Shown: positions 2,876 through 12,663, counted from the first letter of the whole stretch. The stretch is DNA of 63,626 bases, filler included, from Bigelowiella natans CCMP2755 (GCA_000320545.1; 10 parts of 10 records of this genome joined end to end with filler, not necessarily neighbours in it), one strand, 5' to 3'. A program made the numbers and translations. Notes: generated by a model not told the origin, from the sequence alone.

Positions 2876-3476
2876 TTCCTCGAACATACGTTGAACATTC
2901 TTTTGAAGCGAAAGAGCGAGAGCCTTTGTCCTGGCCTTTGAATACGGCAACCTTCAAAGTGTCTTCCTCTTCAGTTCAGCGAGTCCTCCCAACTTGCGAG
3001 GGAGTCGTTACTCGTAGGGAGAGGCACGACTCGGAGGACACAACAAACACCGAATCCAGTATTAGAACAACCGTAACAGGCCGCAAAATGATAGTTAGAC
3101 AACCAGCAAAGGATCAAGACACGTCCACAGACGGCACGATAACGCCGCGCTCGGCGTTGTCAGAAGGAAAAGAGGTATTTTTTTTAAAAAAAAACGGGGA
3201 GATAGCATATATGAATCGTAATCTAGGCCTTCTAATTATCTGTCTATGACATGTCTGCTTTTAATTCGTGTAGAATTGTCACACCATAGAGAAATTTGAC
3301 CATAAATCTCTGTGGAAGTAACAAACTCTTCTTTGGATTGACACATCTTCTTATTGCTCTTCTTCAACAACACCAGTCCATAATAAACTTTCGAAGACGC
3401 CTTGTAGCTGCAAAAACCTCGAGAAAGAAATTGCCATGGTAGTGTGCTATGATTATACACATACACCCTACACACA

Positions 3477-3508
<32 letters not shown>

Positions 3509-3521
3509 CACACATAATTTA

Positions 3522-3591
<70 letters not shown>

Positions 3592-3957
3592 GTGCGTAAC
3601 TTTGTAGATATATTTCAAAGATTTTTGATATCTTTGCATTGTGCGCGTGTACATAAAAGATGAAAGCATAAGATAACGGTTTGTTAATGGCCTTCTCAGG
3701 CTTCCAAAGGATTCAGATTGGCGAAAGTTCCTCTTCCGCATCTTCGATGACGCCGGCTCGTCATGGGTAGATATGAAGGATCAATATTGATAAAAACCGC
3801 TTCCTTTACCGAGAACATCGACGGCTTTTGTAGCTAAACCAACCATTTTTTTTAATCGCGAGCACCGTAAACAACCGCGGGACGCCGCACTGCCTTTATA
3901 TGTTCTGATACGTTATAGCAGCAACATCGTTCAGATGGAGAGATCGCCGCAGCGTCG

Positions 3958-4004
<47 letters not shown>

Positions 4005-4652
4005 CCTGTATGATTCTGATCTAGTCCACGCACAGGTGTCAATAGTATTCTCTCTCATATCGGCGGGCTCGTGTGCCTATCGTGTGCAGCGATGGTACGT
4101 ATTGACACATTGTGCAGAATCAAATCCTTTCTATTGATTGAGATGTGACGGTTTGCGCTGTATGCATACATCGGACCGATCGTCCATTGGCATGCCCTTT
4201 CATGTTTTCGAGCCACAATGACGAGCCTCGCGCCTTCTTTCCCCCTCTCCTCCCCCTTGGACAGATTGTAAGCTCCATGCCGAAATTTCGATACCCGAAC
4301 TATGGGGATGAAGAAAACGACACATCGAGCACATTTGACCACGTATGTGTTGCTCCATGCAGCATCTGTCTATGCCGTTGTATTTTAGAGTAAGAGACGG
4401 GAACTCACCTTTCAGAGAAAATTTTTAAATAAGAAGATGACTTGGGAAAGAGGAAGTCCTCTGGCCTCCTCTTTCCTCTTGACCATTTCTCCCTAATCAT
4501 CCGGATACGATTACAACGCAATATATGCATGGATGAGCCACCGTCTACGAGCTTTGTCTTGTAGAAGAAAAGCTACGTGTTCTGTTTCCTCTCGGGTTAC
4601 AGTATTCTCAGTGCAGTGGAAATGAAATCCGACAACGCTGATGTATATATAA

Positions 4653-4695
<43 letters not shown>

Positions 4696-5102
4696 ATGTG
4701 TGTATTGTCGTTCTTCAGATCGAAACAGCCAGTGTAATGTTCTTCACGATCGAGTATATCGTTCGCGTGGCGTGCTGCAGTGCAATGTCGGAGGTGTACA
4801 TAACGGGAAGCCCTTTCCTGTTTACCCAGGTGCGTTATTTCGAGCTTTTGATGAATCGAACGTCTCCTCCTCCTCCTCCTTCTCCTCCTCCTCCTTCGCC
4901 TCCTCCTCCTCCTCCTCCTCCCCCTTGTTTTTGATTCCCGGCTCGCTATGCGCTGCGGGGTGCAGTTTCGAATAAGTTTCTGCAAATAGCAGATATTATA
5001 TTATTCTTCACATATGGCACCATGTCTCAGGAAATACCATGGTCTTGCTTCACCGAGTCGCAGTGGGTTCATTTAAGGAAAATTTGGTGTGTTTGTCCCC
5101 CT

Positions 5103-5147
<45 letters not shown>

Positions 5148-6578
5148 GTGTGTGGGTGTGTGTGCGTGTGTGTGTTTGGTGAGTGAACCGATACGTCTAC
5201 TTTATGGACCCGACACATACCCTGTCTGGCCACGGATATCATCTATGTTCTGAAGGATCATTAATATTTGAGGGATGAGTGAGGGGGGGGGGGGGAGAGC
5301 AGCAGCAGCTGTTTTCTGCCAACGAATTGATGTTATATAAATATAAATATATCTTTTTATATATATTGTAATATATCGTATAAATGACACTCCTCCCTCC
5401 CTAAATCCCACCCAGCTACTTCGTCTCCAAGCCCATGAACATAATCGACGTGATAGCGATTCTCCCGTGGTATCTCGAGGTAATAATAGGATGCAGAGAA
5501 TAACCTTCTAAAAAAGATCCATGTGAATACAGCTCGGATAGTGGGAAGTGGGGGGGGGGAGAATGAGCGTTCCACTAAATTCGAGTGGCCTTGATTCTGT
5601 AAAATGAACTTTCCAAACGCCGCGTGTGCTCATTAGTTTGGCGAAGGGCTCGGAGTCAATCTCACTATCTTCAGAGTAGCAAGGTGACCGAGCTGCAAAT
5701 ACACGACGACGACGATGCTATACATCCTACTCGTAGTCCAGGCCAACCACCTCTTTAAAACACCTTATCTCAACCTTCCCCTCCCTATCCCTTCCCCCCC
5801 CCCTCTCCCCTGAAAATCGGAAAAATGCCACAGGCTGCTCAGGCTGGTGAAGCTATTTAAAGGTATTAGAAGCATGCACATGCTGATATTTTCCCGCTAT
5901 ATTCATTCGAACCACAAAACAAGAATCTGGTCATCGAGCTACCACCACCACTACCACTACCACGTCTGTGTGCTGACCTTCCTGTTTCGTTTTACAAAGG
6001 CAACACGATGATCCCGTTAGTGATGACAGTAGCGGGAAGAGCTGCATACCTTATCATCCAGGTGCGTTCGCGTAAGCTGGAATTGAGGGGAAAGAGTCCT
6101 CTTTTCTCAATTCCATATCCTTGCAAAATGCGGAACTGCAGAGTCTTCAACAAAGATGATACGCCGCGTAGAGCACCGCCACCACCACCACCACACCGCT
6201 CACACCTCATCTACTACATCAGGTGGCAGCGATTCTTGCTCTCTTTATGGTCTTCATGGCCTGCGTCATCTTCTTGTGCGAGCAAGGTCGGTGGTGGCCC
6301 CGGAGCATAAAACTGATTAGAAGGGATGATAATAACCTGAAGGAGAATGTGCCATAGACGTCGCGCACAATTACTTCCTTTTTTACTTACCGTCCTGCTT
6401 GCTTGCTTCTAGGCGATTACAATGAAGAGACCGGCAAATTCGAGCGAGACAACATGTTTGGTGAGAAGGAGGAGACGCCCTTCACATCGATTTTCATCTC
6501 GTTTTGGTGGGTTGTCGTGACCTTCACAACAGTAGGGTAATACGAGTGTCCTCGGCACACTGTTATACAAACATGATA

Positions 6579-6632
<54 letters not shown>

Positions 6633-8963
6633 CGTGTGCGTGTGCGTGTGCGTGTCTTAAATTGTGCGAGCACGTGCATGTGAGCGGGCAAGTGTGTATG
6701 TGTGGGTGTGGGGGGCCATATGTCTTCGTGTGCAGCATCTACACTCCATGGATCTCTCATTGCCGATTATCCCCTCCCCCATCATCCTCCTAACCTGTAG
6801 ATATGGTGACTTGGTTCCAACCACTGTCGCTGGCCGCATCGCGGGGTCCTGCGGAATTATGCTGAATCTGGTGCTGTTCGCTGTGCCGATCACGATTGTG
6901 ACGACGATTTTCATGGACGAATACAACCGACAAACCCTCGACGGCAAGTATAACGATCTGTATCGTGCCGTCGTCAAGTACGAGGGCGAGAAGCTCTCAA
7001 GACTGGTGGGGCCCATCCCCGCACCTTTATGCCATTGATGATAGTGTGCGGTAGATGTCTCGATGCGCTTGCTGCATTCGCAGCACGCGTGCGCGGGCGC
7101 GTGTTTAGTTTGGTGATAAGCGATGGAGAGTAATCGCATTGTTTCCATTCGTCCCTTCCTCCCCTCTCCTCTTCCCTCCTTCTCTCCCTCGAATAAACAC
7201 CCTCTCATCGCGCTCGCACCTCCTCCAGGTCCGGAAGGAGGCCAACGAGACGTTCGCGTTCCAGGAAACCCGCACGAATTTCTTTCCAAACAGGGGCAAC
7301 TTTTTTGCCCGGCTTTTTTACTTATTCGAGGACTTCAAGAGCGCGACCTTGTCCAGGATCGTGCAGACGATAGTCAACATCATGATCATTCTCTCCGCTC
7401 TCTCGCTGATGATAGAGTCGCTGCCAAAGTAAGAACGGGGGAGGAAAAGGAGGAGGGAGGAGGGGGGGGGGGGGGGGGGGGCGTACTAACGCTTTCGTTG
7501 CGAGATGGCAGATCGACCTTCAAACAAATGGAAAGGGGAAAGTTTTTTTCTCTCTCTTTCTCTCTCTCTTTTCTGTCTTACTCTCACACACGAGCGAGCG
7601 TGCGTGGTTTGACCAAATGATGTACACCCACTGCGCGTAGGTACCGCTACCCGGAATACGGAGAGAAAGAGGTACAAGCATGCTGTGTGTTTTGTTGATG
7701 GAGAATGCCCACTACCGAAGAACAATGGGGTTTCTTAAAATCATCAGAGTAATTATGTCGAGAGGAGCCACTCCCTTTGGATGTCTGACTCGAAATGCGC
7801 CTGCTTTGAAATCCAACCATCGTCATTATCACCATCCTCCTCCTCATAATTGTGTGCAAACCATTCTTTCAGGGTGACAGCGCGCCCGAATTCCAAAAGA
7901 TCGAGGTCGTCTGCGTGATCTGCTTCAGCGTGGAGCTTTTCACACGCATGTTGACCGTGTGGTTCGTCCCTGCGGCAGGGCTGCGCCGATGCGGATACAG
8001 GTCGCCAACCCACTTGATTGTTGAGCTTACCCGAGCAATTTTTGACATTCCTCTTCTTCCTCGGTCTGTGTTTCTTCCATCTTTTTCCAGCAATATGAAG
8101 GATAGTGACAAAAGCTGGCTAAACGGCCTCAAGTGGCTAGTGAACAAGCACACGCTCATCGATATCTGCTCGACCTTACCGCTCTACATCCAGGTTGTTG
8201 TCCAAATACTCATTTGACACGACGAGGGAGGGAGGAGGAATGTGCCTATACTACCGAATCGTCGTTGGAAAGGATGCCATGCTAATCCCCCCCTCCCCTT
8301 TCTAGTCCGGACGGATGTTGTTCTTTGTTTCTCACAATTTCCTCCTGCTGCTCTTTGCCTCCATAGTCTTTTGTAGCGCTGCCCTCTCTTGGCTTTCTCC
8401 GTGTGCTCCGGTTGCTTCGGATGGTGCGGGTGCTGCGACTGGCTAAGAGCGCGAAGGGGGTCATCATCCTCTCAGACGCCATCTCAAGAAGTAAGAAATC
8501 CGTGTGAAATGTGGAATTATGAGCGAGCTCAGTTGGAGACAGGGCCTCTAGCGACAGCAAGACAGCCCTGGACATAAAAAAGAAAGCGTAGAGGAAGAGA
8601 GAGACAATGGAGGGTGGAGGGGGGGGGGGGGGGCGGAGGAGAGCCACTGCATCCGCTCACTTACCACGCGCTGACTCGTCACGCTATTTTTAGGCATGGA
8701 AGCGCTGATGTCGCTCTCGGTCTTGTTCATTGCTTGGATCGTATTCGCGTCGTCCATTATGTTTTACTGCGAGCAAGGGAAATGGAACCCCTCCGACGGC
8801 AGGTTGAGTGCCTTCTCCACTCAGACAGTGCAGCTATCACAGGGACGGGCGGCGAAGCAAATGAATTGCCAACCCCCCCTTCCCCCACCCCAGTTTTCCA
8901 TCCTACACACCTCAAATATAGCCGTGAGGCAGCATTCTGTGAATAGAATAGATGCACGAAATA

Positions 8964-9001
<38 letters not shown>

Positions 9002-10870
9002 TTTTTTTAATATTATATTTATAATGTGCGTGAATGCATGAAACAATATTACAACATACTTTGTGACATCTCCTCACCTTTACTCATTGCAGATATGAGA
9101 GAGGGGTACTGTACGGGGCCACCGAGGAGACTCCTTTCCAGTCGATCCCGAGCACACTCTGGTGGATGATTGTCACTCTCACGACCGTCGGCTACGGCGA
9201 CATGTAATTTTCCCCAATCCCCTCCCCTCCCCTCCCCTGTGAGAAAGCGTTTTAATATTTTATGCCATCGTCTATCACAGGTATCCAACCACCCTTGCTG
9301 GAAGAAGCACGGGTGTCTTCATCCTGTTCTTCTCCGTCATCTCGCTCGCCGTCCCTATCGCTGTCGTCGGTGTGAATCTGGAGAAGGCGAACAAAGAGTA
9401 CGTCTTCTTGCACCGTGAAGACGGCCGTGCCCGCGTGTATGTTCGTGGTCTCTCGTTCCACTCGCGCATTGCGTTCGTTCGTTGGTGTGCGCTCACAAGA
9501 TGCCACCCTCCCCCAATTTTTCCCCCCATGAAAATAGGTATCAGCAGCGAGCGAAGAAGCACTCCGCCATCATGGAGGGGAAGGTGTCTCGATCACACCT
9601 GAGCCAGGGGAACCCCTCCGTCGAGTTCTTTGACGACATTGCCCGGAGGACCGGGAACATCGAGGACAACCTCGGGGAGATTCAGAAGCTGATTCGGTAG
9701 CGAATAGCGCGTAGAAAGATCTAAAAACAACCGACCTCAAGAGGGATGTCCGCCTAGCTGCATATGTTCTCTATAAAATTATGACCACATTTAGTCCGTA
9801 GATAGGGCAGTAGCCATTGGTGTCTTCCAGCGACTCGATAAAAGAGAAGAGAGATAAAAGGACAATCGCGAAATAAACCTTTCTACCGCCCGCCCCTACC
9901 CCCCCATCCCCCGCCAGGTACCACTCCAACTTCTTGCGCAAATCGGATTCCGTGTTGAGGAAGCAAGTCAAGAGCGCAAACCTCACGCTGGTGCCGTCCT
10001 GCATCACGGACTCAAAGAAACGCTTCGAGCGCATCGCAGAGAAGCTGGACATCACCCTAGAGCAGTTCAAGTACATGCAAAACTACCACGCCAAGATCTG
10101 GAACAACTACTGCCAGTCACAGCGGCACCGCGGCTTCTTCAACAAGGCGCTCCGCACGGAGATCTCAAAACGGACCTGCTTCGTCTTCTGGCTGCAGCAT
10201 GTGCAGAGCATGCGAAAGAAAAATTCCCAGAAGGCGAACGACTTCATCGACTACAAGCACACCGCCAACAGAGACGTGACTGTCTCGGAAAAAGACCGCG
10301 CGAGCAGCCAGCAAAAAAATAGGCGAAGGAGGGAAGCGCAGTCCAACGGCACACAGAAAAGGGAACGAAGACGGTGGGTGAGAACGGAGAGGGGGGGGGG
10401 AGAAAAAGGCGGGGGAGGCACAACAACAAACGGATTACAATTGAAACATGCACATCCGCACATTGCACGCACATGTCGCTGACCGCCTCCATCTTCTCCT
10501 GCGCACCCCCCTCCTTTTAGGAGCAGCTTCTTTGGGAGCTTGATCGGTTTTCGAAACAAGGAGCACGGTGGCAGTGGGACGACGGGATCAGAACTCGAGC
10601 TGACCTTCCCAATGACGCCGCAGCAATACACCCGGAGGCATCTAAAAGGCACCCCAAGTTCTAAGCATTTGCAGAATCCCCAGACTGAATCAATCGTGGG
10701 TCTTATGGACAGTCGCGGAGATTTGGTGAGGAAACAATAGAGGAGAAGGGAGGAAGGGGGGGGGGGGGGCAAAAAGGGGCTAGAGATGGAGAGCATGGGT
10801 AGCTTAGGATATCGGGCTCACTCATGATACCATTTGTATGTCGTCAAGTGAAATTTCAAACCTTCCCCCT

Positions 10871-10917
<47 letters not shown>

Positions 10918-11153
10918 CCCCTCACACACATACACAACACGCGCTCTAAATCTCTGGGCCGAATAACCATCAGGTGTCTGCGCAGCCGGGGGAGAAGAAA
11001 GAGCTTCGGCAACACAACCATACCGATGAAGAAGACGACACCGCCAGTGATCTACGGGCCCGGGAAGAGAAATCCGGCGAGCGATTAGAGCCAGCGGCGA
11101 GGGTTGCTGATAGTAAATGTGATAGGGAGGATGATGGTGTAGATATGCGGTGA
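2876..11153 (+). CDS. Tandem two-repeat (2 x 6TM) voltage-gated potassium channel, Kv-like, more than 20 exons; true start uncertain (upstream of 2876)
   Basis: Repeat 1: LPKDSDWRKFLFRIFDDAGSSW (3699-3766), S2 IETASVMFFTIEYIVRV, S3 PMNIIDVIAILPWYLE, S4 FRVARLLRLVKLFK, S5 VAAILALFMVFMACVIFLCE, pore FTSIFISFWWVVVTFTTVG|YGDLVP (6536/6801), S6 ...FAVPITIV. In-frame link through intron 7006-7228 to repeat 2: RLFYLFEDFKSATLSRIV, IEVVCVICFSVELFTR, LIDICSTLPLYI, FLRVLRLLRMVRVLRLAK, FQSIPSTLWWMIVTLTTVGYGDM|YP (9181-9203), LAVPIAVV. A long C-tail follows, with TGA at 11151-11153. One 1-nt frame break near 4065. Confidence 0.92.
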
Positions 11154-11838
11154 GACCTACTTCTCTTGTCGATTGGCATAGAAAAGACTGTGCCGACGCA
11201 ATTTTACTGGTAGTTCACGGCGGCAGAAATCATTTCGGTATATTGTTTCAATGTAAAACTATTCGATGGACCAAATACTAAATGTACATTACGGAAAGTA
11301 CCTTACGCTACACAAATGCACATTGTAGATTATGACAGACGATTTCAAAACTTTACGGAAGGAAAGGGAAGCAAGTGTCGTATGCATGTTGACCGCTATG
11401 TCGAATGCTATTCAAGGCACAACCACAAAACACGATGGACTTTCATGCATCGCATTAAACGCTGCAAAATAAGGAGTCGAAATGATCACATCGAGGGTGT
11501 GGGTGTTTTGATTATGTGGAGGAGAAATGGCTTTCTTCCTACCGCACTAACTAGCTAAACCCACCCGTAAGCTAGTTCAGGATCTCAGGATGCTATATGT
11601 GTGTAGCCAGAGCACAGCAGGGTTCCTCCGCCGCAACAGCTTACGCACTGCAAAATGCACGCCATCCCAGCAGCTAGATCCAGAGATGCTTATTCATCAT
11701 GGCCTGGATTGTGATTGATGTGGTGGCGCCGCCGTTGCTATTGTCACACGTACACACGCGTAAGCAGCGCAGCTTCAATAATGAGACTTTAGCTAGCGCG
11801 CACGCATGGCTGTGGCCACAGCACTCATGTGTTCTGAT

Positions 11839-12028
11839 ACTGGTGTATATACACCAGTAATTATTGCATCGCTTTTCGAGTTGACAAAAAACTTATTTGC
11901 ATGGTCTTAACCAATTCTAGAATTGATACACAATAACCACGTTTTACATTCTTTTACGTATATATATTATATGCTAGAATTTTAGCCGCGTTTAGCGACG
12001 TAATAATTACTGGTGTATATACACCAGT
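11839..12028. mobile_element. 190-bp MITE-like element, 27-bp terminal inverted repeats, 5-bp direct flanking repeat CTGAT
   Basis: 11839-11865 ACTGGTGTATATACACCAGTAATTATT is the exact reverse complement of 12002-12028. CTGAT lies at both 11834-11838 and 12029-12033. The interior is AT-rich and non-coding. Confidence 0.75.
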
Positions 12029-12286
12029 CTGATGTTTGCTTGTTTCTGCTGTATGTGCGAGGTCGGGCTACAGAGTTCGGCTGTCGCAAAACAATGCTAG
12101 AATGCATGGAATCACAGCACGGCCGGGAGTGAGCAACAGTGTCTACATCACGACATCGACGACAGCTGTGCATGCATTATTGTTGTCATGCACAGAACTA
12201 TGTTTCTGGGCCACAACTGCGCGCCGCCGCTAGCTTGTCATTGTCGTGCTATGTAGCGCCGAGAAAAGGGGCCGCATTATGTGGAT

Positions 12287-12362
<76 letters not shown>

Positions 12363-12471
12363 TATATGGCAGATGACATCTAACCCCGACAAGATGTTGC
12401 TACAGCTACGATGGTTCGAGTCGCCCGCCGTTCAAATGTCGCCTATATGTATATCTAATATAGCTTAGTTT

Positions 12472-12616
12472 CTAGTTATGATGCACCGATTTGTGGTGGG
12501 GGTCTCCATTCGTCATAAATAGCGTTCCAGCGACAGTGATGAAAATGGCCATCACGAACATCAACGCGCAGCTGAGGAGTAAGGGAGAGGGAAAGGGTAC
12601 AAGGGAGGAGGGGAGG

Positions 12617-12663
<47 letters not shown>

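What the first reader, a model, noticed from the sequence alone, without database searches (positions are those of the whole stretch)
2876..11153. Single-chain two-repeat Kv channel with two intact TTVGYGD filters
Seen: two complete S1-S6 units are joined in frame by a linker of about 50-60 aa across a phase-0 GT-AG intron (7006-7228), with no stop or new start between them. No T1 domain or cyclic-nucleotide-binding domain is evident. Established: Kv channels are tetramers of one-repeat subunits; 2x6TM chains are typical of TPCs, which lack GYGD; CNGK is a four-repeat K+ channel. Inference: a dimeric pseudo-tetrameric K+ channel, a rare architecture that parallels the intermediate step toward four-domain channels. 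Tandem K+ channels may already be reported in some protists, so novelty needs a search.
Basis: partly seen in the sequence, partly recalled or inferred. Interest (0 to 1): 0.8.

Follow-up and report, generated by a model that had tools for sequence, protein, structure and literature searches.

The report
Two-repeat Kv-like potassium channel gene
This Bigelowiella natans gene really does encode one protein chain carrying two complete voltage-gated potassium-channel units. The same "tandem Kv-like" design was already described in 2020 in a sister alga, dinoflagellates and oomycetes, so this is a well-supported new member of a known but still uncharacterised kind.

Summary
Spliced transcript contigs from two studies remove intron 7006-7228 (GT..AG, phase 0). 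They join repeat 1 (S1-S6, TTVG|YGD) to repeat 2 (S1-S6, TTVGYGD) in one open frame. A paralog in the same genome carries the repeat-1 S6, the linker and the whole of repeat 2 in one uninterrupted ORF.

The organism is Bigelowiella natans, and the public model is Bigna1 82352 (971 aa). That model is imperfect. A 1-nt difference between genome and transcripts at 4068 made it start inside S1, and it keeps two stretches that the transcripts splice out.

Both repeats are Shaker-type by sequence and by fold. They have 5 and 7 S4 charges, a charge-transfer Phe and an AVP gate motif. There is no T1 domain and no CNBD. The nearest solved relatives are Kv1-Kv4, not TPC.

An AlphaFold model of the Lotharella ortholog places the two repeats like neighbouring Nav domains. 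That fits a dimer forming a pseudo-tetrameric K+ pore, but the dimer is inferred, not shown.

Pozdnyakov et al. [quoted passage not shown] This is therefore a new member of a known kind, with no functional data anywhere yet. Interest is moderate to low.

The parts
3088..3217 (+). Candidate first coding exon (ATG at 3088, MIVRQPAKDQ...). Inferred only.
   Evidence: It holds the only in-frame ATG upstream. Donor 3218 is phase 1, which fits the acceptor before 3408. The X2 contig extends about 481 nt upstream of 3700 (arithmetic). This region is not covered by laid reads.
3408..3438 (+). Short exon (..AKTSRKKLP, W split). Its 3' end is joined to 3700 in the transcripts.
   Evidence: The loose-end consensus before 3699 in X1 and X2 equals window 3408-3437. 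The W-[IL]-P..W+K motif is conserved in the L. globosa protein. The 5' boundary is inferred.
3700..3766 (+). Repeat 1 pre-S1 helix (WRKFLFRIFDDAGSSW).
   Evidence: Joint 3765/4035; AG/GT boundaries.
4036..4094 (+). Repeat 1 S1. The genome lacks one G behind 4068 relative to the transcripts.
   Evidence: table 4: 'put in behind 4068: G' in X1 (depth 38.3) and X2 (52.8). With the G the frame is continuous.
4265..4342 (+). Repeat 1 end of S1 and S1-S2 loop. The public model's Met start lies here.
   Evidence: Joints 4093/4264 and 4342/4719. P0001 begins MIVSSMPKF.
4719..4829 (+). Repeat 1 S2 (IETASVMFFTIEYIVR: two Glu and the charge-transfer Phe).
5031..5086 (+). Repeat 1 S2-S3 loop.
   Evidence: Joint 4826/5028. 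The donor at 5087 was chosen by frame and depth. The sequence is identical to P0001.
5416..5479 (+). Repeat 1 S3 (NIIDVIAILPWYLE).
   Evidence: Pfam Ion_trans 61-84; joint 5477/5635.
5637..5683 (+). Repeat 1 S3-S4 loop and start of S4.
   Evidence: Joints.
5834..5862 (+). Repeat 1 S4 core (RVARLLRLVKLFK, 5 positive charges spaced by three).
6000..6061 (+). Repeat 1 S4-S5 linker.
   Evidence: Joint 5858/5996; depth arithmetic; same sequence as P0001.
6223..6286 (+). Repeat 1 S5.
   Evidence: AG/GT boundaries, frame and depth.
6413..6536 (+). Repeat 1 turret, pore helix and first half of the filter (TTVG).
   Evidence: Contig pieces 6411-6535 (table 8); Pfam Ion_trans 162-189.
6801..7005 (+). 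Repeat 1 filter second half (YGD), S6 (AVPITIV) and first part of the inter-repeat linker.
   Evidence: Contig pieces 6800-7004; Pfam Ion_trans_2 E 1.2e-5.
7006..7228 (+). Phase-0 GT..AG intron between the two repeats. Unspliced, the frame would stop at 7036-7038.
   Evidence: It is removed in X2 record 5 (record 1449->1450) and in X1 record 3 (depth arithmetic), with no intron depth. Boundaries.
7229..7428 (+). Linker, pre-S1 helix and S1 of repeat 2.
   Evidence: Contig pieces 7228-7428.
7641..7671 (+). Repeat 2 S1-S2 loop (YRYPEYGEKE).
   Evidence: Joints 7428/7641 and 7669/7871.
7873..8000 (+). Repeat 2 S2 (IEVVCVICFSVELFTR).
   Evidence: The public model wrongly reads on through 8001-8090.
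8091..8193 (+). Repeat 2 S2-S3 loop and S3 (LIDICSTLPLYIQ).
8367..8490 (+). Repeat 2 S4 (LRVLRLLRMVRVLRLAKSAK, 7 positive charges) and S4-S5 linker.
   Evidence: Pfam Ion_trans 90-127, E 5.9e-5.
8694..8802 (+). Repeat 2 S5.
9093..9203 (+). Repeat 2 turret, pore helix and filter (TTVGYGDM).
   Evidence: Pfam Ion_trans_2 E 3.5e-7.
9281..9397 (+). Repeat 2 S6 (AVPIAVV).
   Evidence: The public model retains 9398-9537, which the transcripts splice out.
9538..9696 (+). Start of the cytoplasmic C-terminal region.
   Evidence: Joint 9397/9538. The donor at 9697 is inferred. The reads laid ended at 9599.
9918..10221 (+). Conserved, family-specific, all-helical C-terminal domain (invariant F..W motif).
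   Evidence: 51% identity to L. globosa P0002 745-845, E 1e-30. Conserved in 10 relatives. AF2 pLDDT 80, all helices. No Pfam, PDB or Atlas match.
10222..11153 (+). Low-complexity C-terminal tail and stop codon, as in the public model (further introns predicted). Unverified.
   Evidence: P0001 913-971 maps to 10974-11150. There is no read evidence and no conservation.

Best explanation
The region 3088?-11153 (+) is one intron-rich gene of the chlorarachniophyte alga Bigelowiella natans (public model Bigna1 82352).

Its single mRNA encodes a roughly 1020-aa chain. The chain holds two diverged Shaker-type units (29% identical), each with a voltage sensor S1-S4 and a pore S5-P-S6 carrying TTVGYGD. 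The units are joined by a cytoplasmic linker of about 67 aa and followed by a family-specific helical C-terminal domain.

Shown here: the one-transcript, one-ORF architecture; the Kv-type sequence and fold of both repeats; membership of the published 'two-repeat tandem Kv-like channel' family, with a Lotharella globosa ortholog and at least three paralogs in the same genome.

Inferred: two chains (homo-dimers, or hetero-dimers with paralogs) assemble so that pore domains 1 and 2 alternate around one K+-selective pore. The pore would be gated by two non-equivalent pairs of voltage sensors (5 and 7 S4 charges). This would be a K+-selective analogue of the TPC half-channel design.

The tandem in this lineage most likely arose by internal duplication of one Kv-like gene, separately from the dinoflagellate tandems.
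For: Architecture:
- Transcript contigs from two studies join both repeats across 7006-7228. All 16 joints checked are GT..AG.
- The frame is open for 785 codons.
- Paralog Bigna1 83110 has S6 of repeat 1, the linker and all of repeat 2 in one 464-aa ORF, with Ion_trans E 4e-40.
- P0001 is 100% identical and named jgi/Bigna1/82352.

Kv-type features:
- Two Ion_trans stretches in P0001 and 5 relatives, with no BTB_2 or cNMP_binding hit.
- S2 Glu/Phe/Glu, S3 Asp, S4 charges every third residue, TTVGYGD and an AVP gate motif in both repeats.
- Best solved relatives by sequence are Kv1.3, Kv3.1, Kv2.1 and Kv1.2, with both repeats matched.

Fold:
- AF2 of the L. globosa ortholog gives pLDDT 85 and pTM 0.80.
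- Each repeat superposes on Kv1.3/Kv2.1 at 2.1-2.6 A over about 235 residues.
- The whole model superposes on Nav1.7 over 472 residues, Z 17.5.

Family and history:
- About 70 of the fetched relatives have two filters 260-470 residues apart.
- In the tree, the repeat-1 clade has support 99, the repeat-2 clade 99, and the two are sisters at 98. The window pairs with L. globosa in both halves, at 96 and 97.
- The AU test rejects one clade for all first repeats, p 0.008.
- The family was described in PMC7576140.
Against: - There is no protein-level, electrophysiological or oligomer evidence for this or any tandem Kv-like channel.
- K+ selectivity and voltage gating are read from motifs only.
- The genome sequence itself has a 1-nt frame break in S1 of repeat 1. 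It is taken to be an assembly error or strain difference because two transcript sets carry the extra G. No DNA run covered that site.
- The N-terminus and the exons beyond 9599 are not verified by reads.
- The runs are labelled 'RNA?' by guess, although the exact GT..AG removals show they are cDNA.
- The fold model is of the ortholog (about 50% identical), not of this protein.
- The tree is a 'quick' search, and the AU group was named after the tree had been seen.
Confidence: 0.8

Rival explanations
1. These are two adjacent single-repeat Kv genes. Repeat 1 ends at the stop at 7036-7038 and repeat 2 has its own start. The fusion would then be a gene-model artefact.
For: Unspliced, the frame stops at 7036-7038. 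The public model is an ab initio fgenesh call with other errors.
Against: - The spliced contigs of two studies cross 7004/7228 with no intron depth.
- There is no ATG-initiated frame for repeat 2 upstream of its pre-S1 helix.
- The paralog has the junction inside one ORF.
- Transcript-derived proteins of Lotharella and Gymnochlora have the same architecture.
Confidence: 0.02
2. It is a decaying pseudogene. The 1-nt frame break at 4068 destroys S1 of repeat 1, so at best a truncated protein is made.
For: The genome sequence as given shifts frame at 4068. The public model starts after the break.
Against: - Both transcript contigs (depth 38 and 53, from studies of 2016 and 2019) carry the extra G and restore the frame.
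- Other 1-nt differences between the reference and run X20 in introns suggest reference indel errors or strain variation (table 4).
- Every conserved functional residue is intact, and the branch in the tree is short (0.30-0.38).
Confidence: 0.03
3. It is a real tandem channel but does not work as a plasma-membrane delayed-rectifier homodimer. It could be an obligate heterodimer with one of the other B. natans tandem paralogs. It could be an organellar channel (endomembrane or periplastid) in the manner of TPC. One of the two voltage sensors could be silent.
For: - At least four tandem paralogs exist in the genome.
- The repeats differ in S4 charge number, and repeat 1 has a 3-residue gap at the S4 end.
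- PMC7576140 notes unequal R/K content as a family trait.
- From established knowledge, only one VSD of TPC1 senses voltage.
Against: Nothing speaks against it here. No targeting signal could be assessed because the N-terminus is unresolved. Both VSDs keep the charge-transfer residues.
Confidence: 0.3
4. It is a member of the two-pore channel (TPC) family that has converged on a GYGD filter.
For: It shares the 2 x 6TM architecture.
Against: - The best sequence matches among solved structures are Kv1-Kv4 and KCNQ, with no TPC among the 60 shown.
- The fold matches are Kv and Nav.
- In the tree the repeats sit among single-repeat Kv-like channels, and repeats 1 and 2 are each other's sisters.
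- The linker has no EF-hands.
Confidence: 0.02

Closest known systems
[quoted passage not shown]
   Same: - A 12TM/2P single chain with TVGY/FG in both repeats and no CNBD.
- Repeats about 30% identical, with unequal S4 charge content and long S4-S5 linkers.
- First and second repeats form separate clades.
- 46% identity over 88% of the public model. The window pairs with L. globosa in both halves.
   Different: - B. natans is not in that paper or its supplements.
- Here the evidence is genomic: at least 22 exons, the junction intron, and a splice-free paralog.
- At least four paralogs are seen.
- A conserved helical C-terminal domain and a shared phase-0 intron position in S3 of both repeats are noted.
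Shaker-type Kv channels (Kv1-Kv4)
   Same: - Each repeat has S1-S6, the charge-transfer centre, a charged S4, TVGYGD and an xVP gate.
- Identity to Kv1.5 is about 30%.
- Each repeat superposes at 2.1-2.6 A on Kv1.3/Kv2.1.
   Different: - Two repeats per chain.
- No T1 (BTB_2) domain.
- An extra 14-20 residues in the turret, and longer S2-S3 loops.
- A dimer rather than a tetramer is expected.
Two-pore channels (TPC1-3)
   Same: 2 x 6TM per chain, with a dimer expected to form a pseudo-tetramer. The two repeats are non-equivalent.
   Different: - TPC filters lack GYG and are Na+/Ca2+-permeable.
- There is no sequence or fold affinity to TPC here.
- The duplication is independent.
CNGK / tetraKCNG four-repeat K+ channels
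   Same: Covalently linked 6TM repeats with GYG filters.
   Different: CNGK has four repeats, each with a CNBD. Here there are two repeats and no CNBD.
K2P (4TM/2P) and fungal TOK (8TM/2P)
   Same: Two pore loops per chain, with a dimer forming the pore.
   Different: Neither has two voltage-sensor domains. Here both repeats are complete 6TM units.

Membership tests
[quoted passage not shown] | Two 6TM repeats in one polypeptide | tested here: met
   The transcript contigs join the repeats. The frame is open for 785 codons. P0001 has two Ion_trans stretches.
[quoted passage not shown] | TVGY/FG-type selectivity filter in both repeats | tested here: met
   TTVGYGD occurs twice.
[quoted passage not shown] | No C-linker or CNBD (this separates them from tandem CNBD channels) | tested here: met
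   No cNMP_binding hit in P0001, P0002, P0004-6, P0010, P0076 or P0208.
[quoted passage not shown] | [quoted passage not shown] | tested here: met
   Repeat-1 clade support 99 and repeat-2 clade 99. The window pairs with L. globosa at 96 and 97 (quick tree, SH-aLRT only).
[quoted passage not shown] | Low identity between the repeats and unequal S4 R/K content | tested here: met
   29% identity between the repeats; 5 versus 7 S4 charges.
Shaker-type Kv (Kv1-Kv4) | N-terminal T1 (BTB_2, PF02214) tetramerisation domain | tested here: not met
   No PF02214 hit in complete relatives. The window's own N-terminus is unresolved, but its upstream exons show no such similarity.
Shaker-type Kv (Kv1-Kv4) | One 6TM repeat per subunit, tetrameric assembly | tested here: not met
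   Two repeats per chain.
Shaker-type Kv (Kv1-Kv4) | Voltage-sensor signature (S2 E/F/E, S3 D, S4 R/K every third residue) and domain-swapped fold | tested here: met
   Alignment. Each whole repeat superposes on Kv chains at 2.1-2.6 A in the model of the ortholog.
Two-pore channels (TPC) | Filter without GYG; sequence affinity to TPC domains I and II | tested here: not met
   GYGD is present in both repeats. No TPC appears among the best 60 PDB sequence hits or the best 50 fold hits.
CNGK / tetraKCNG | Four repeats, each followed by a CNBD | tested here: not met
   Two repeats and no CNBD.
Functional voltage-gated K+ channel (any) | K+-selective, voltage-dependent current; dimeric stoichiometry | not testable with these tools
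   This needs electrophysiology and biochemistry. The one complex prediction gave no verdict (see Tried and rejected).

The most novel reading that the evidence does not exclude
The chlorarachniophyte tandem Kv family, including this gene, arose by its own internal duplication, independent of the dinoflagellate and oomycete tandems. It has since evolved into a truly asymmetric K+ channel. In this reading, two different voltage-sensor types (5 and 7 charges, with a shortened S4 end in repeat 1) divide the gating work as in TPC1. A lineage-specific helical C-terminal domain with an invariant F..W motif replaces T1 as the assembly or regulatory module. That would make it a natural, K+-selective model for the one- to two- to four-domain transition.
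Probability: 0.3. Interest if true: 0.5.

Novelty: new member of a known kind. Interest (0 to 1): 0.3.

Why it matters
Four-domain Nav and Cav channels are thought to derive from one-domain channels through a two-domain stage. Natural two-domain K+ channels with canonical Kv sensors are living examples of that stage, and none has yet been recorded or solved.

This locus adds the first intron-level genomic proof for a chlorarachniophyte member. It also corrects the public gene model, which lacks S1 and the N-terminus and retains two introns. It shows a small paralog family in a sequenced, culturable alga, and it supports an independent origin of the tandem in this lineage. That gives a clean construct for expression and cryo-EM.

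It does not reveal a new kind of channel.

Tried and rejected
- **Complex prediction**. Pore domain 1 x2 plus pore domain 2 x2 scored 0.32 against a mark of 0.34. That is no verdict and is not used for or against assembly.
- **Raw RNA run X21**. Only 10 reads were laid, too few for starts, ends or strand.
- **C-terminal domain.** Pfam, the ESM Atlas and Foldseek against the PDB gave nothing meaningful. By recollection only, the R..F..W+ motif resembles Sfi1-type centrin-binding repeats. No Pfam Sfi1 hit was seen, so this is only a lead.
- **Rfam on the whole piece**. No family was found.
- **Flanking ORFs.** 12896-14005 (+), 15130-15945 (+), 14150-14605 (-) and 15105-15743 (-) gave no Pfam hit, so the flanks remain unannotated.
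- **First literature searches.** Generic terms returned only K2P and TPC papers.
- **P0003** is a false positive, a bacterial Ig/cadherin repeat protein.
- **Handling of the joined model.** Exons were searched singly by reference. The public model P0001 and the L. globosa ortholog stood in for it. The joined translation, with the transcripts' own G at 4068, existed only inside scripts, for frame checks, the repeat alignment and the tree.

Full report
**What is in the sequence.**

The piece (17,514 bases) is a whole contig, C706, of a 91.4-Mb assembly. It is eukaryotic and rich in introns and microsatellites. On the + strand, stop-free stretches between about 3700 and 9400 contain, in order, two sets of S1-S6 pieces. 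Scanned exon by exon, these pieces hit Pfam Ion_trans and Ion_trans_2 collinearly in both sets.

**Transcript evidence.**

About twenty runs of 'organism A' hold roughly a quarter of the sampled words of 4600-9700, which is about what exon-only cDNA contigs would hold. I laid four runs on 3600-9599.

- The table listed 15 joints, all GT..AG. With the 7004/7228 junction that makes 16, and I checked all 16 for boundaries.
- A single 3697-nt contig (X2 record 5, depth 52.8) runs 6411-6535 | 6800-7004 | 7228-7428 | 7871-7997 | 8088-8191 | 8365-8490 | 9089-9203 | 9281-9397 with consecutive record coordinates.
- In X1, from a different study, record 3 must cover 7228-7341. The depth in bin 7000-7199 (0.96) equals 5 exon bases. 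The depth in bin 7200-7399 (42.6) equals 114 nt at 38.3 plus 88 nt at 47.3.

So intron 7006-7228 (GT..AG, phase 0) is removed, and both repeats sit on one mRNA.

**Gene model.**

From the joints, GT/AG boundaries, frame and depth I derived these exons: 3700-3766, 4036-4094, 4265-4342, 4719-4829, 5031-5086, 5416-5479, 5637-5683, 5834-5862, 6000-6061, 6223-6286, 6413-6536, 6801-7005, 7229-7428, 7641-7671, 7873-8000, 8091-8193, 8367-8490, 8694-8802, 9093-9203, 9281-9397 and 9538-9696. With 9918-10221 added, the frame is open for 785 codons.

Three points differ from the genome text or from the public model.

- Both transcript contigs have an extra G behind 4068 (table 4). Without it, S1 of repeat 1 is out of frame.
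- The transcripts splice out 8001-8090 and 9398-9537. The public model reads through both.
- The start is unresolved. The transcripts continue upstream of 3700 into 3408-3438 (loose ends). The only compatible in-frame ATG is at 3088. Position 2876 is not a start codon.

The 9696/9918 junction is not covered by reads. The L. globosa transcript-derived protein is collinear across it, and 9919-10221 is 51% identical to that protein (E 1e-30).

**Identity.**

I ran HMMER with the 68-aa S6 exon against 1.84 billion representatives. It found 75 proteins, most of them with two matched stretches and lengths of 600-1100 residues. The top hit, P0001 (971 aa), is the public model jgi/Bigna1/82352 of Bigelowiella natans, at 100% identity.

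Relatives with the same architecture include:

- B. natans 82898, 83110 and 147169;
- Lotharella globosa A0A7S3Z380 (46% identity, 88% coverage);
- Gymnochlora sp. CCMP2014;
- unnamed metagenome and Logan proteins;
- more distantly, Effrenium voratum and other MMETSP/EukProt proteins.

**Splice-free confirmation.**

In the same genome, contig C534 (the Bigna1 83110 locus) has one uninterrupted 464-aa ORF. It runs from S6 of repeat 1, through the linker, and across all of repeat 2 including TTVGYGD. Its Ion_trans E-value is 4e-40.

**What the repeats are.**

- P0001 and five relatives each give two Ion_trans stretches, with no BTB_2 (T1) or cNMP_binding hit.
- Aligned with Kv1.5, Shab and a choanoflagellate Kv, both repeats keep the key residues. 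These are the S2 Glu, Phe and Glu; the S3 Asp; S4 charges at every third position (5 in repeat 1, 7 in repeat 2); TTVGYGD; and an AVP gate motif.
- The two repeats are 29% identical to each other and about 30% identical to Kv1.5.
- Among solved structures the best sequence matches are Kv1.3, Kv3.1, Kv2.1, Kv1.2 and Kv4.2, for both repeats. No TPC is among the 60 shown.

**Fold.**

I therefore folded the complete L. globosa ortholog (P0190:50-720) with a 37-row family alignment. The model has pLDDT 85.2 and pTM 0.80.

- By Foldseek the top hits are Kv1.2, Kv4.2 and Kv2.1.
- By VIA-align each repeat superposes as a whole on Kv1.3, Kv2.1 and Shaker at 2.1-2.6 A over about 230-245 residues (Z about 15-16).
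- The whole two-repeat model superposes on Nav1.7 over 472 residues (Z 17.5, rmsd 5.8 A). The repeats are therefore placed like neighbouring domains of a pseudo-tetrameric channel.

This supports the half-channel reading but does not prove it. Dimerisation itself remains an inference.

**History of the tandem.**

I built a tree of 83 single repeats (quick search, SH-aLRT support).

- The ten chlorarachniophyte-type first repeats form one clade (99).
- The ten second repeats form another (99), and the two clades are sisters (98).
- The window pairs with L. globosa in both halves (96 and 97).
- The dinoflagellate-type tandems form their own first-repeat and second-repeat clades elsewhere in the tree.
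- Forcing all first repeats into one clade costs 52.8 log-likelihood units, AU p = 0.008. One caveat applies: the group was named after the tree had been seen.

The phase-0 introns after WYLE (repeat 1) and LYIQ (repeat 2) fall at the same aligned position. That fits a duplication at the DNA level.

**C-terminus.**

About 160 residues after S6 of repeat 2 are conserved across the ten chlorarachniophyte-type proteins, with an invariant F..W. They are predicted to be all-helical (pLDDT 80). They have no match in Pfam, the PDB or the Atlas.

**Novelty.**

[quoted passage not shown] They described the same traits: separate repeat clades, repeats no more than 30% identical, unequal S4 charge, and TVGYG filters. 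B. natans is not in their text or supplements. No later paper in the library uses their terms.

The gene is therefore a new, genomically documented member of a known kind. No tandem Kv-like channel has been recorded or solved.

**Verdict.**

- Novelty: new member of a known kind.
- Interest: 0.3.

Noticed in passing
window 4068: The genome sequence lacks one G that both transcript contig sets carry. This shifts the frame inside S1 of repeat 1. It explains why public model Bigna1 82352 starts at an internal Met and lacks the N-terminus and S1. It is likely an assembly indel or a strain difference.
   Followed up: partly
window 8001-8090 and 9398-9537: The public model (P0001) reads through two stretches that the transcripts splice out. 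This adds 22 aa to the S2-S3 loop of repeat 2 and 28 aa after S6 of repeat 2.
   Followed up: yes
window 5479/5637 and 8193/8367: Phase-0 introns fall at the same aligned position at the end of S3 in both repeats (WYLE| and LYIQ|). This may be an intron older than the internal duplication. The other intron positions do not coincide.
   Followed up: partly
window 9918-10221 (P0001:640-800): A conserved all-helical C-terminal domain with an invariant F..W (R..F..W+), found only in the chlorarachniophyte-type tandem channels. It has no match in Pfam, the PDB or the Atlas. By recollection only, the motif resembles Sfi1-type centrin-binding repeats.
   Followed up: partly
P0008, P0013, P0007, P0009, P0060, P0214, P0216 (relatives, not in the window): Kv-like proteins with three or four GYGD filters and three or four Ion_trans stretches but no CNBD. 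P0008 is 1748 aa. P0013 is 1493 aa with four near-identical repeats. Diphylleia rotans transcripts reach 1169 aa. These are not CNGK-type, and they may be four-repeat K+ channels that have not been described.
   Followed up: partly
G000:C534 (L002, L005, L007), C3583, C1151, C2867: Further Kv-like loci in the same genome. C534 is Bigna1 83110, whose second half is intron-free. This contrasts with the 8 introns inside or bordering repeat 2 of the window's gene.
   Followed up: partly
window 15444-15692: Two copies of a 123-bp direct repeat (92% match) lie inside long ORFs on both strands. The flank 11200-17514 has no Pfam or Rfam hit and was not covered by the reads laid.
   Followed up: no
window 5509 and 8873: Run X20 holds intron sequence, so it is DNA. 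It differs from the reference by single-base indels in introns, which suggests a different strain or homopolymer errors in the reference.
   Followed up: no
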